The position numbers and the translations under genes were made by a program. A stretch of DNA of 64,000 nt. It comes from Diadema antillarum (taxonomy: Eukaryota). Location of the stretch: contig NW_027271072.1 in the NCBI RefSeq assembly GCF_040938485.1, forward strand, positions 2,914,001 through 2,978,000, written 5' to 3'. Of this stretch, positions 16,901 to 19,900 are shown piece by piece (within the stretch, counting starts at the first letter, position 1; every line of letters begins with the position of its first letter). The notes under the pieces are model-generated. The model had not been told where the DNA came from. It did not search any database and was given only the letters and a program-made list of their open reading frames with translations.

Positions 16901-19900
16901 GCCAGTATTCTGGCTCTCGATGTACAACAAGCAAATGCAGAACTAGAAAAGCACTTGGAGAGTGCCAATCTCTGTCAAGCAGCTCATTTACATCCATATA
17001 CACATTTTCTAAAAATGGCCCTATTTCTCAATGATAACGAATCCTTTCTAGTGTCTCACTACCTCAGCTTCCTGCTGCGCATTGAGCACATGCTCAGTGT
17101 GGGTATACGCACGTTCAATCCCCTCATTTGTTTGCCTATTTCCAAATGATAAACAATCCTTCAGAAAATTCAAAAACATTCCTGGAACCAAACAGTGACC
17201 CAGATAACTACCAAAATGTAATCATCTCTTCTTTGATTCATTATCAACTATTCTTGAAAATTTCATCCAAATCCTTATATAACTTTCTGAGTTATTTTGC
17301 AAACAGATGAACAAACAAACAAACAAACAGACATACCAACACCAACAAAAAAAACACACAACCTCCTTGGCGAAGGTAATAGGAACCGCATAAAGCCATG
17401 TCACTCTAGTACCCCATGAAATGCTTACAGGGGGAAGACGGCCTCCTGAGTGCAGTGTAGTGTGGTGCTATACTGGGGCTGGGGGTTCTTCAGCATGGTG
17501 TACCAATCAGACAGCTGGAGCACTTGGCAAGATCGGAGCTGGGGTGTGCCTGACAACAAAGATTGAGAATTAGTGATGCAAGTTAATTAAAACAAAATCA
17601 CAGCTGCAGCACTGAAATCTGAAGAGATTAACCAATAACCCAAAGGATAGTGTTTTGCTTTGGGGTTTTTTTTTTAGTTTTTTTTTTTTTTTTTTTAAAT
17701 AGAGAAATCAGAGTAGTAAAATAAGCAAATAAATGAAGTTATGATCACAATCTGGCAGATGATATGCAAGTTAGAGCTGGGGTGTGCCTGACAACAAAGA
17801 TTTAGAATCGGTGATGCCAGTTAGAACAAAATCACAACTGCAGCACTGAAATCTGAAGAGATTAACCAATAACCCAAAGGATAGTGTTTTGCTTTGGGTT
17901 TTTTTTTTTAGTTTTTTTTAGTTTTTTTTTTAAATAGAGAAATCAGAGTAGTAAAATAAGCAAATAAATGAAGTTATGATCACAATCTGGCAGATGATAT
18001 GCAAGTTAGAGCTGGGGTGTGCCTGACAACAAAGATTGAGAATCGGTGATGCCAGTTAGAACAAAATGACAACTGCAGCACTGAAATCTGAAGAGATTAA
18101 CCAATAACCCAAAGGATAGTGTTTTGCTTTGGTTTTTTTTTTAGTTTTTTTTAAAATAGAGAAATCAGAGTAGTAAAATAAGCAAATAAATGAAGTTATG
18201 ATCACAATCTGGCAGATGATATGCAAGTTAGAGCTGGGGTGTGCCTGACAACAAAGATTGAGAATCGGTGATGCCAGTTAGAACAAAATGACAACTGCAG
18301 CACTGAAATCTGAAGAGATTAACCAATAACCCAAAGGACAGAGTATGGCTTTGTTATTTTTGTAAAGTTTTTTTTTAAATAGAGAAATCAGAGTAGTAAA
18401 ATAAGCAAATAAATGAAGTTATGATCACAATCTGGCAGATGATATGCATGTTAGAGCTGGGGTGTGCCTGACAACAAAGATTGAGAATCGATGATGCCAG
18501 TTAGAACAAAATGACAACTGCAGCACTGAAATCTGAAGAGATTAACCAATAACCCAAAGGACAGAGTATGGCTTTGTTATTTTTTTAAAGTTTTTTTTAA
18601 AATAGAGAAATCAGAGTAGTAAATGAGCAAATGAGTGAAGTTATGATCACAATCTGGCAGATGATATGCAAGTTAGAACCACTTAAAAATCAGACATTTA
18701 TCAACATAGCATCCTGAAGTCATTGGTCACCTCAGAACACACATCCTCGACATTCATTTTCACTGTTTACATTGCAGCAAATGTTTAGATCTATATTTAT
18801 ATACACATTGTATTTATAACCACATAAAGACAAAGTTACATTCACATCTGTATTCACTATGAACAATTTTCACACAATGTTGGTTTTCAGGTCATTGTTC
18901 AGGTCATTACATGACAGGGAGAAAAAGTTACATGCATGAACTTTCTCAAAGCTCTACAAGTAGAGTAAATTTAACTTCATGAGTCTACATTCTATGAAAC
19001 ATCAGATTGATATCTTGTCATACAGTGAGATGCTATGCTCTATAAACTTTCTCCCTAATGTGCCAGAGGATCTGGCCAGCAGAAGTTTGTAGCACCAATA
19101 CCCCATTTATAAATAGTCGGGAACAGGAGCAGTCCTATAATGCTTTAACCCATGCTTTGGTGAGTTTGTTCAGATATATGAGTTACCAACCGCCATGACC
19201 GAACATGAAGAGGCCGAGAGAGGAAGAACCGACAAGGTAACCTTTGCATATGTGGGAACTTTGGACATATGTACAGTGTGTACTACTTCCAGAGCACTCT
19301 AAACACTAGTGACTATCTATATACACTGTAGGAGTTCGAGTGCTTCAGAGCCACGGTGTCTGTTCATACAGAGTTCAGAGTACAGAGCACGAAATGCTCA
19401 GTGCAAATGGAGTATGAGTTATGACTCCTCCTGATTCTAAGAGCTTACCCATGGGATCAAGCACCAGGAGCGTGATGATGCTGGCTATGCAGCACTCCAA
19501 GGCAGCTGAGATGTGCAGAGTGATGACTTTACTGTCAAGGGGAAGGAGAGTCAATACAAGACATTGATTACCTATTCCATTAAATATACCCTTTCTGACT
19601 TTGACTGAAGTTTAAAAGCTTCAAAGTTCATTGCAATTGATTGGCAAATTGCCCTACATTGGTGTAAATACACACAGAATTGATCAGTGTTTTTGCAGTG
19701 GCCATGACAAAAGAAATCATTGGCATAAGGCATGCATACGAGCAGGATCGAACCTGCAACCTCCTGATCACTGGACAGGTGTCTTATCCACTATCTTATC
19801 CATTTCAAAGTTCATAAATACAGATTTGTTCATGTGATGCACATTTTTCTATTTCTCCAACATTCAGACCATCACAGTATTAAGCATACAAGCACTGGAC

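What the first reader, a model, noticed from the sequence alone, without database searches (positions are those of the whole stretch)
17536..18676. Array of four decoy 3' splice sites, each followed by an in-frame stop, stacked upstream of a JKAMP exon
Seen: the tandem unit contains the real exon-5 acceptor (..TCTCAATCTTTGTTGTCAG|GCACACCCCAGCTC). Four extra copies lie upstream in the intron, with first exonic bases at 18467, 18244, 18022 and 17787, versus the real one at 17549. Every decoy keeps 14 nt of exon sequence and then reads TAA in the JKAMP frame (G-T-P-Q-L-stop), whereas the real exon continues CGA. Decoys carry a consensus CTAAC branch motif at about -34; the real site uses CTAAT at about -21. 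The units contain no strong donor, so using a decoy would give a long exon with a premature stop. Known: such stops upstream of later junctions trigger NMD. Inference: this is either a copy-number-tunable unproductive-splicing rheostat for an ERAD factor, or a natural test of how the most distal of five near-identical acceptors is chosen.
Basis: partly seen in the sequence, partly recalled or inferred. Interest (0 to 1): 0.72.

Follow-up and report, generated by a model that had tools for sequence, protein, structure and literature searches.

The report
Splice-acceptor minisatellite in urchin JKAMP intron
A 223-base stretch spanning the intron 4/exon 5 boundary of the sea-urchin JKAMP gene has been copied in tandem, leaving four look-alike splice acceptors upstream of the real one; this is a known kind of variable minisatellite (amphioxus "mirages"), and nothing shows it is a regulatory device.

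Summary
On the minus strand, window 17536-18676 is a 5-unit tandem array (222-238 nt units). Each unit ends in the exon-5 acceptor plus 14 exon bases. The four upstream copies then read TAA in frame.

The TAA is one founder event, not four. It is the CTAAC at the 5' edge of the duplicated segment, copied with each unit.

The gene is JKAMP (Pfam JAMP) and is intact. The genome matches the uncollapsed 1.75-Gb Diadema antillarum assembly. The same locus occurs a second time about 970 kb away, almost certainly the other haplotype, and has only 2 units. The array is therefore a real, copy-number-variable minisatellite.

The scan had already noted the same construction on other DNA of this genome. 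I verified the SUFU and PRPF18 acceptor arrays. The ANAPC4 and GFM1 donor arrays are notes only.

The kind is already published: amphioxus "mirages", including acceptor-side arrays with 6 versus 3 units on two haplotypes and normal splicing, and donor-side minisatellites in human F7, CBS, LMNB2, PDGFA and IFI6.

Most likely the decoys are largely silent because only the distal acceptor lies 121 nt from a donor. Rare decoy use would be cleared by NMD. The "rheostat" reading has no support.

The parts
17536..18676 (-). Tandem array of 5 units (A 18454-18676, B 18231-18453, C 18009-18230, D 17774-18008, E 17536-17773). Each unit is about 209 nt of 3' intron 4 plus the first 14 nt of exon 5. Unit E is the authentic one.
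   Evidence: TRF period 223, 5.0 copies, 94% matches. Unit alignment shows 90-97% pairwise identity. Unit tree.
18451..18487 (-). Decoy acceptor 1: 20 nt of intron, AG, 14 exon-derived nt, then TAA. First 'exonic' base is 18467.
18228..18264 (-). Decoy acceptor 2. First 'exonic' base is 18244, followed by an in-frame TAA.
18006..18042 (-). Decoy acceptor 3. First 'exonic' base is 18022, followed by an in-frame TAA.
17771..17807 (-). Decoy acceptor 4. First 'exonic' base is 17787, followed by an in-frame TAA. It carries one C>A change in the pyrimidine tract (ctaaatc).
17429..17549 (-). JKAMP exon 5 (121 nt; real acceptor at 17549; donor CCT|gtaagc after 17429). It encodes (G)TPQLRSCQVLQLSDWYTMLKNPQPQYSTTLHCTQEAVFP(L).
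   Evidence: Pfam JAMP positions 103-145, E=7e-13. Boundaries and frame.
19449..19531 (-). JKAMP exon 4. Its donor TGG|gtaagc (GT at 19448-19447) is the 5' splice site that must choose among the five acceptors.
22898..22991 (-). JKAMP exon 2 (VVPDQKTCPGLYCGRTVIQDDAGNVTYSACG). It has no start codon, so an exon 1 lies further upstream and was not located.
22189..22343 (-). JKAMP exon 3
   Evidence: Pfam JAMP positions 16-77
16294..16463 (-). JKAMP exon 6
   Evidence: Pfam JAMP positions 143-201
15434..15510 (-). JKAMP exon 7
   Evidence: Pfam JAMP positions 203-241
13980..14180 (-). Coding part of JKAMP exon 8, ending in a TAG stop codon
   Evidence: Pfam JAMP up to position 292

Best explanation
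This is a locus-specific, copy-number-variable intronic minisatellite of the 'mirage' type.

Origin: one 223-bp tandem duplication straddled the intron 4/exon 5 boundary of JKAMP. Its junction, CAGCTC|TAAC with 2-nt microhomology, fused 14 exon bases to the CTAAC at the start of the duplicated intron piece. That junction created the in-frame TAA. Unequal exchange or slippage then changed the unit number. One haplotype of the sequenced animal now has 5 units (4 decoys) and the other has 2 (1 decoy).

Splicing: by construction, only the most distal acceptor yields normal mRNA. I infer it is chosen because it alone lies 121 nt upstream of a usable donor and is followed by real exon sequence (exon definition, the shortest bounded exon). 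The decoys have no donor of their own. They would have to define 359-1039-nt exons ending at the same donor.

Consequence: any transcript spliced to a decoy carries a stop six codons into the exon and should be removed by NMD. The net effect on JKAMP output is nil or small, and the array is not a designed regulator.

Shown: structure, origin of the stop, gene identity and integrity, copy-number difference, recurrence in this genome. Inferred: silence of the decoys, role of exon definition, NMD.
For: - Structure and coordinates.
- Single-junction origin of the TAA: the unit boundary can be read directly.
- Gene identity: six colinear JAMP (PF05571) exon matches, present on both copies of the locus.
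- Second copy: colinear at 83-99% identity, with only 2 units.
- Evidence that the two copies are alleles:
  - Four sampled stretches of contig C184 outside the dispersed elements each occur exactly twice in the assembly.
  - The assembly size, 1,754,659,819 b in 2963 contigs, matches the D. antillarum v0.4 assembly (1.75 Gb, 2964 contigs).
  - That assembly has 84.4% duplicated BUSCOs and 2.52% heterozygosity, which its authors ascribe to retention of both haplotypes (PMC13511894).
- Strong purifying selection on both copies: 18 synonymous and 1 nonsynonymous difference, dN/dS about 0.017. The decoy-bearing gene is therefore functional, and at least one decoy is shared by both haplotypes.
- No usable donor inside the array.
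- No RNA structure (z=+1.29) and no Rfam family.
- No excess conservation of the decoy cores.
- Same construction verified at SUFU (31-bp unit, 10 versus 12 copies on the two haplotypes) and PRPF18 (89-bp duplication with an in-frame TAA).
- Precedent:
  - Amphioxus mirages: BflGb6 repeats the 3' intron end plus the 5' exon part in 150-160-bp units, with 6 versus 3 units on two haplotypes, and RT-PCR shows regular splicing. Adh3 and TnC mirages 'do not generate aberrant mRNAs' (PMC3087553; PMC3902484).
  - Human donor-side minisatellites in F7, LMNB2 and PDGFA use only the authentic site. IFI6 and CBS also use two pseudo-sites (PMC1557585).
Against: - No transcript data for this locus could be examined. 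Silence of the decoys is inferred, not shown.
- Three decoys are identical to the real site from -23 to +14, and all four carry a consensus CTAAC branch motif. By sequence they are fully competent.
- They are also transcribed first.
- Classic duplicated-site experiments cited in PMC1557585 (Lang and Spritz 1983 against Kuhne et al. 1983) disagreed on which copy wins.
- NMD would hide decoy use at steady state, so 'normal mRNA seen' in the precedents does not exclude some loss of output.
- The allelic status of the two copies rests on assembly statistics and a published description, not on read depth.
Confidence: 0.75

Rival explanations
1. Passive dosage modifier, a weak form of the reader's rheostat. 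Each decoy captures a fraction of splicing events, the products are destroyed by NMD, and productive JKAMP mRNA falls with unit number. The minisatellite then acts as a cis expression/splicing QTL, without being a regulated switch.
For: - Decoys are identical to the real site from -23 to +14 and have consensus branch motifs.
- They are transcribed before the real site.
- Copy number differs between haplotypes, 4 decoys against 1.
- Some human donor-side arrays (IFI6, CBS) do use two pseudo-sites (PMC1557585).
- The real unit of the 5-unit haplotype alone has gained a second branch-like motif (CTAAT at -21) and a 4-nt insertion. This could be compensation.
Against: - No RNA data.
- Amphioxus mirages, including acceptor-side ones, gave normal splicing by RT-PCR.
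- No donor lies near the decoys.
- Decoy cores are not significantly conserved.
- Similar arrays sit in essential genes such as SUFU, PRPF18 and ANAPC4, which argues that they are generally tolerated because they are silent.
Confidence: 0.13
2. The 5-unit haplotype is a hypomorphic or null allele. Splicing goes mainly to an upstream decoy (first come, first served), and the animal survives on its 2-unit allele.
For: - One classic experiment with duplicated sites reported use of only the proximal copy (Lang and Spritz 1983, as cited in PMC1557585).
- The animal is heterozygous.
Against: - The coding sequence of the 5-unit copy is intact. It differs from the partner almost only at synonymous sites, 18 against 1.
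- The partner haplotype also carries a decoy.
- Precedents show that the exon-adjacent site is used.
Confidence: 0.05
3. The unit number, or the whole second copy, is an assembly artefact. Alternatively the two loci are true paralogues from a roughly 1-Mb segmental duplication rather than alleles, in which case '5 versus 2' is not a polymorphism.
For: - Both copies lie on one contig about 970 kb apart. That is unusual for haplotigs and shows a mis-join.
- dS of 0.10 between the copies is about four times the genome-wide heterozygosity.
- The amphioxus paper notes that one mirage was mis-assembled in a draft genome.
Against: - Units differ by 3-10% and the array is much shorter than a HiFi read, so miscounting is unlikely.
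- Each sampled stretch outside the dispersed elements is present exactly twice, and the partner haplotype continues on another contig, C1883.
- 84.4% of BUSCO genes are duplicated in this assembly.
- Flanks are only 0.4-1.7% diverged.
Confidence: 0.07

Closest known systems
[quoted passage not shown] Sources: PMC3087553, PMC3902484; original description Canestro et al. 2002, NAR 30:2871 (not readable here).
   Same: - The repeat unit is the 3' end of an intron plus the 5' part of the next exon (BflGb6).
- Units are 150-160 bp there and about 223 bp here.
- Unit identity is 81-100% there and 90-97% here.
- Unit numbers differ between the two haplotypes of one animal (6 versus 3 there, 5 versus 2 here).
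- Both occur in a highly heterozygous marine deuterostome and at many genes of the genome.
- The authentic site is the copy attached to the full exon.
   Different: - The host is an echinoderm, not a cephalochordate, and the gene is JKAMP.
- Normal splicing has been shown by RT-PCR for amphioxus cases but not for this locus.
- Somatic instability, reported for Adh3, was not examined here.
Human donor-side boundary minisatellites: F7 IVS7 (37 bp, 5-9 repeats), IFI6 (6-16), CBS IVS13, LMNB2, PDGFA (PMC1557585)
   Same: - A polymorphic minisatellite has a terminal monomer that contains the authentic exon/intron junction, so identical pseudo splice sites are stacked in the intron.
- The site next to the exon body is the one used.
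- The pseudo-sites are functional when the authentic site is mutated (F7).
   Different: - Those arrays reiterate 5' splice sites downstream of the exon. This one reiterates 3' splice sites with their branch points upstream of the exon.
- The 5'-to-3' scanning mechanism proposed for F7 cannot be transferred directly.
Regulated unproductive splicing (AS-NMD, poison exons) and decoy splice sites or decoy exons
   Same: An alternative 3' splice site whose use introduces a premature stop upstream of later exon junctions.
   Different: - Known regulatory cases are conserved across species and respond to a factor, often the gene product itself.
- Here the stop is a duplication by-product, conservation could not be tested, and no use or regulation is shown.
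Tandem duplication model of intron gain (Rogers; Hellsten et al. 2011, PMC3265369)
   Same: A tandem genomic duplication duplicates splice signals, and the material between them is treated as intron.
   Different: No new intron is created here. An existing intron is lengthened by about 900 nt, and former exon bases become intronic.

Membership tests
Boundary-spanning minisatellite ('mirage' / F7-type) | Head-to-tail tandem array of at least 2 units | tested here: met
   TRF: period 223, 5.0 copies; alignment of units
Boundary-spanning minisatellite ('mirage' / F7-type) | The terminal unit contains the authentic exon/intron junction, so the splice site is reiterated in the intron | tested here: met
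   Five acceptors with identical AG|GCACACCCCAGCTC. The last runs into the Pfam-matched exon.
Boundary-spanning minisatellite ('mirage' / F7-type) | Unit number varies between alleles | tested here: met
   5 units in the window against 2 at C184:1957287-1957735. Allelic status is inferred from two-copy occurrence and PMC13511894, not from read depth.
Boundary-spanning minisatellite ('mirage' / F7-type) | Reiterated sites are silent or nearly so; normal mRNA is made from the exon-adjacent site | not testable with these tools
Indirect support only: intact CDS under purifying selection on both haplotypes.
Regulated unproductive splicing (AS-NMD rheostat) | The alternative site introduces a premature stop upstream of the last exon junction | tested here: met
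   TAA lies 14 nt into each decoy 'exon'. Exons 6-8 lie downstream.
Regulated unproductive splicing (AS-NMD rheostat) | The alternative site is actually used, and its use changes with conditions or a factor | not testable with these tools
   No RNA reads available
Regulated unproductive splicing (AS-NMD rheostat) | The alternative element is conserved by selection | tested here: inconclusive
   Within the array, the -20..+14 core has 2 variable columns against 5.1 expected, P=0.08. Homogenisation of repeats confounds the test. No other urchin genome could be reached.
JAMP/JKAMP protein family (PF05571) | Match to the family profile above the curated cut-off, colinear over the protein | tested here: met
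   Six exon-wise matches on the window copy covering model positions 16-292. Four exceed the 25-bit cut-off (49-62 bits); the exon 4 and exon 7 matches are below it (21 and 19.9 bits). Both haplotypes match.
NAGNAG / short-distance tandem acceptors | Competing AGs a few nucleotides apart that share one branch point and pyrimidine tract | tested here: not met
   Acceptors are 222-238 nt apart, and each has its own branch motif and tract.

The most novel reading that the evidence does not exclude
The number of decoy acceptors acts as a cis dosage modifier. The 4-decoy haplotype would yield measurably less productive JKAMP mRNA than the 1-decoy haplotype, with the loss hidden by NMD. Boundary-spanning minisatellites, apparently common in Diadema at both acceptors and donors, would then be a genome-wide class of copy-number splicing QTL in highly heterozygous marine invertebrates. 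The local island of deep haplotype divergence over JKAMP (dS 0.10 against 2.5% genome-wide) would then mark two long-lived, functionally different alleles.
Probability: 0.1. Interest if true: 0.6.

Novelty: new member of a known kind. Interest (0 to 1): 0.3.

Why it matters
For JKAMP biology it probably matters little. Its value is as a ready-made natural experiment.

- One sequenced animal carries a 4-decoy and a 1-decoy allele of the same gene. The alleles can be told apart in mRNA by 19 exonic differences. Allele-specific RNA-seq can therefore measure what stacked, sequence-identical 3' splice sites cost.
- With the verified SUFU and PRPF18 arrays and the noted ANAPC4 and GFM1 donor arrays, it shows that 'mirage' minisatellites, so far described in amphioxus and on the donor side in a few human genes, are also frequent in an echinoderm.
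- That points to high tandem-duplication input plus robust exon-adjacent site choice in very polymorphic deuterostome genomes.
- It also warns annotators that such arrays invite wrong exon boundaries.

Tried and rejected
No junction, depth or allele-specific data were obtained.
- Dispersed repeat or transposon origin of the unit: rejected. The unit occurs only at this locus and its partner, plus one 33-nt chance match.
- Structured RNA or a known RNA family in the unit: rejected. Fold z=+1.29; no Rfam match in 13-23 kb.
- Poison cassette exon (decoy acceptor plus a donor inside the array): rejected. The best internal GT scores -1.65 on a rough matrix.
- Recursive splicing at decoys: rejected from the sequence. 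Joining exon 4 to a decoy gives ATGG|GCACAC, which regenerates no GT donor.
- Selection maintaining the decoys: the test was inconclusive.
- Dating the expansion from unit divergence: rejected as unsound. Unequal exchange between haplotypes that already differ by several per cent creates diverged neighbouring units at once.
- Cross-species or population copies through protein fragments: the search for homologous proteins with the exon-5 open frame found nothing. That says little, because only 24-77-residue proteins were eligible.
- The large representative search was not used, because the protein's identity is not in doubt.
- A joined (spliced) JKAMP model was never built or searched.
- Older papers could not be read: Kuhne 1983, Smith 1993 and Canestro 2002 are not held. 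They are cited only through papers that cite them.
- The N runs at window 25431-25599 and 43377-43730 were left untouched.
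Full report
**What is there.**
Read on the minus strand, window 17536-18676 is a tandem array of five units of 222-238 nt (Tandem Repeats Finder: period 223, 5.0 copies, 94% matches). 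Every unit ends with the same 3' splice site and 14 exon bases...TTGTTGTCAG|GCACACCCCAGCTC. The four upstream copies continue TAA; the fifth continues CGA into the exon.

Three decoys match the real site at every base from -23 to +14. The fourth has one C>A change in the pyrimidine tract. A CTAAC motif puts its branch adenosine at -34 in each decoy. The real unit has TTAAC at -34 and CTAAT at -21. A rough donor matrix (frequencies from memory) finds no usable GT in the array: the best scores -1.65, against -0.66 to 6.4 for the gene's real donors.

**Where the stop comes from.**
The array's 5' edge reads ...GTGGTTC|TAACTTGCAT.... The exon reads ...CCCAGCTC|CGATC.... Each internal junction reads CCCAGCTC|TAACTTGCAT. 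One 223-bp segment, from TAAC... in the intron to ...CAGCTC in the exon, was therefore duplicated in tandem, with two bases (TC) of microhomology at the junction. The in-frame TAA is the CTAAC at the start of that segment. All four stops descend from that one junction, so they are not four independent coincidences and not evidence of design.

**The gene.**
Six colinear matches to Pfam JAMP (PF05571, model positions 16-292) lie on the minus strand. With splice signals and reading frame they give these exons:
- exon 3: 22189-22343
- exon 4: 19449-19531
- exon 5: 17429-17549
- exon 6: 16294-16463
- exon 7: 15434-15510
- exon 8 (coding part): 13980-14180

A further exon at 22898-22991 encodes the conserved CPGLYCG stretch. 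It has no start codon, so an exon 1 must lie upstream. A stop in exon 5 of 8 lies upstream of three junctions. By the established 50-55-nt rule, that makes decoy-spliced mRNA a target of NMD.

**Which genome, and the second copy.**
The unit occurs nowhere else in the assembly except about 970 kb upstream on the same contig. There the whole locus is repeated colinearly at 83-99% identity, with all JKAMP exons intact.

That copy has only two units: one decoy (first exonic base at C184:1957525) and the real site (1957300).

The assembly holds 1,754,659,819 bases in 2963 contigs. A published Diadema antillarum assembly (hifiasm v0.4) has 1.75 Gb in 2964 contigs, 84.4% duplicated BUSCOs, a haploid estimate of 0.7-0.9 Gb and 2.52% heterozygosity. 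Its authors attribute this to retention of both haplotypes (PMC13511894). Earlier notes of this scan also name the species.

I sampled four further stretches of the contig. Outside the dispersed elements, each occurs exactly twice. The second copy runs to the contig end, and its continuation lies on another contig.

The two JKAMP copies differ at 19 of 807 coding bases: 18 synonymous and 1 nonsynonymous (dS 0.10, dN 0.0017).

I conclude, with about 90% confidence, that they are the two alleles of one animal, chained into one contig by a mis-join. The animal is then heterozygous for 5 against 2 units. The array is 1.1 kb, its units differ by 3-10%, and the mean HiFi read was 6.8 kb. A miscount is therefore unlikely.

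**Is it special to JKAMP?**
No. Notes from this scan pointed to similar arrays elsewhere in the genome, and I checked two.
- SUFU has a 31-bp unit, ...ctatctctcacag|attgttg, repeated 10 times on one haplotype and 12 on the other. The real exon hangs on the last copy.
- PRPF18 has an 89-bp duplication of acceptor plus 33 exon bases followed by an in-frame TAA, on both haplotypes.
- Notes also list donor-side arrays in ANAPC4 (36 against 47 units) and GFM1. I did not check these.

That makes five genes with notes on 736 windows, so boundary-spanning minisatellites are a recurrent by-product of this genome's repeat dynamics.

**What is known.**
The construction is published.
[quoted passage not shown] They are described for Adh3, TnC, PGBD5 and globin genes.
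- BflGb6 repeats the 3' end of an intron plus the 5' part of exon 2 in 150-160-bp units. It has 6 and 3 units on the two haplotypes and 81-100% unit identity. Inner units are homogenised and boundary units are not.
- RT-PCR indicated that regular splicing is not disturbed (PMC3087553; PMC3902484).
- In humans, donor-side versions exist in F7, IFI6, CBS, LMNB2 and PDGFA. Only the authentic site, or that site and the next two pseudo-sites, are used. [quoted passage not shown]

My unit tree shows the same turnover pattern. Units A and B (with C) form a clade specific to the 5-unit haplotype. Units D and E and the partner's two units are unresolved.

**How it most likely works.**
A tandem duplication across a 3' boundary always leaves the full exon on the last copy, so only distal-site use gives normal mRNA. 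JKAMP is under strong purifying selection on both haplotypes, and both carry at least one decoy. The distal site must therefore be used efficiently.

The simplest mechanism is exon definition. The distal acceptor lies 121 nt from the exon-5 donor and is followed by genuine exon sequence. The decoys lack a donor and would need to define 359-1039-nt exons. This mirrors the donor-side arrays, where the site bounding the shortest exon is also the one used. Occasional decoy use would be removed by NMD. This step is inference.

The unit has no predicted structure (z=+1.29) and no Rfam match. Its splice-site core is not significantly more conserved than the rest of the unit (P=0.08). Nothing in the sequence points to a selected function.

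**What remains open.**
By sequence the decoys are fully competent and are transcribed first, and NMD would mask their use. A modest copy-number-dependent loss of output cannot be excluded (about 13%), and a hypomorphic 5-unit allele is possible (about 5%).

On the 5-unit haplotype alone, the real unit has acquired CTAAT at -21 and a 4-nt insertion. This could be compensation or could be noise.

The JKAMP gene body lies in a 10-15-kb island of 6-11% haplotype divergence, while the flanks differ by 0.4-1.7%. I cannot explain this beyond coalescent variance.

**Verdict.**
It is a new example, in an echinoderm and in JKAMP, of a known kind of minisatellite. The 'rheostat' interpretation is unsupported. 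The 'natural experiment' framing is fair, and the heterozygous animal makes it cheaply testable.

Noticed in passing
window 13800-22500 against G000:C184:1954690-1962158: The two haplotype copies differ by 6-11% (substitutions only) across the JKAMP gene body and by dS=0.10 in its exons. Flanks on both sides differ by only 0.4-1.7%, and genome-wide heterozygosity is reported as 2.52%. This is a local island of deep haplotype divergence with no explanation so far.
   Followed up: partly
G000:C184, about 1.48-2.02 Mb against about 2.40-2.99 Mb; C1883:55522-59524: Contig C184 carries both haplotypes of a stretch approaching 1 Mb, one after the other. The second copy ends exactly at the contig end and its continuation lies on contig C1883. 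This is a haplotype mis-join in the uncollapsed assembly. Gene counts and 'tandem paralogues' on this contig should be read with that in mind.
   Followed up: partly
G000:C184:1973500-1982218 (partner haplotype; insertion point corresponds to window ~31885): An element of about 8.7 kb with 423-bp terminal direct repeats is present on one haplotype only. Dozens of 94-99% identical copies occur across the genome, so it looks like a recently active LTR retrotransposon.
   Followed up: no
G000:C184:2401249-2402081: A dispersed element of about 830 bp is present on one haplotype and absent from the partner (1482068). The search listed about 40 further copies, mostly 96-99% identical, so this is another recent insertion polymorphism.
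   Followed up: no
window 13176-13770: A 324-bp tandem duplication (1.8 copies, 90% matches) lies just 3' of the JKAMP stop codon, probably in the 3' UTR.
   Followed up: no
G000:C1544:98951-99264 and G000:C129:7077303-7077670 (L023, L025): SUFU: a 31-bp minisatellite made of a splice acceptor (ctatctctcacag|attgttg), with 10 copies on one haplotype and 12 on the other. The real exon (IVGVCTEELQ...) is attached to the last copy.
   Followed up: partly
G000:C206:976633-976802 and G000:C518:1095364-1095533 (L027, L028): PRPF18: an 89-bp tandem duplication of acceptor plus 33 exon bases. The upstream copy reads ARDAYLQMAIGI-stop. It is present on both haplotypes.
   Followed up: partly
window 22183-22191: The donor of JKAMP exon 3 is GAG|gtacaa, a poor match to the usual consensus (-0.66 on a rough matrix).
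   Followed up: no
window 25431-25599 and 43377-43730: Two runs of N (169 and 354 bases).
   Followed up: no
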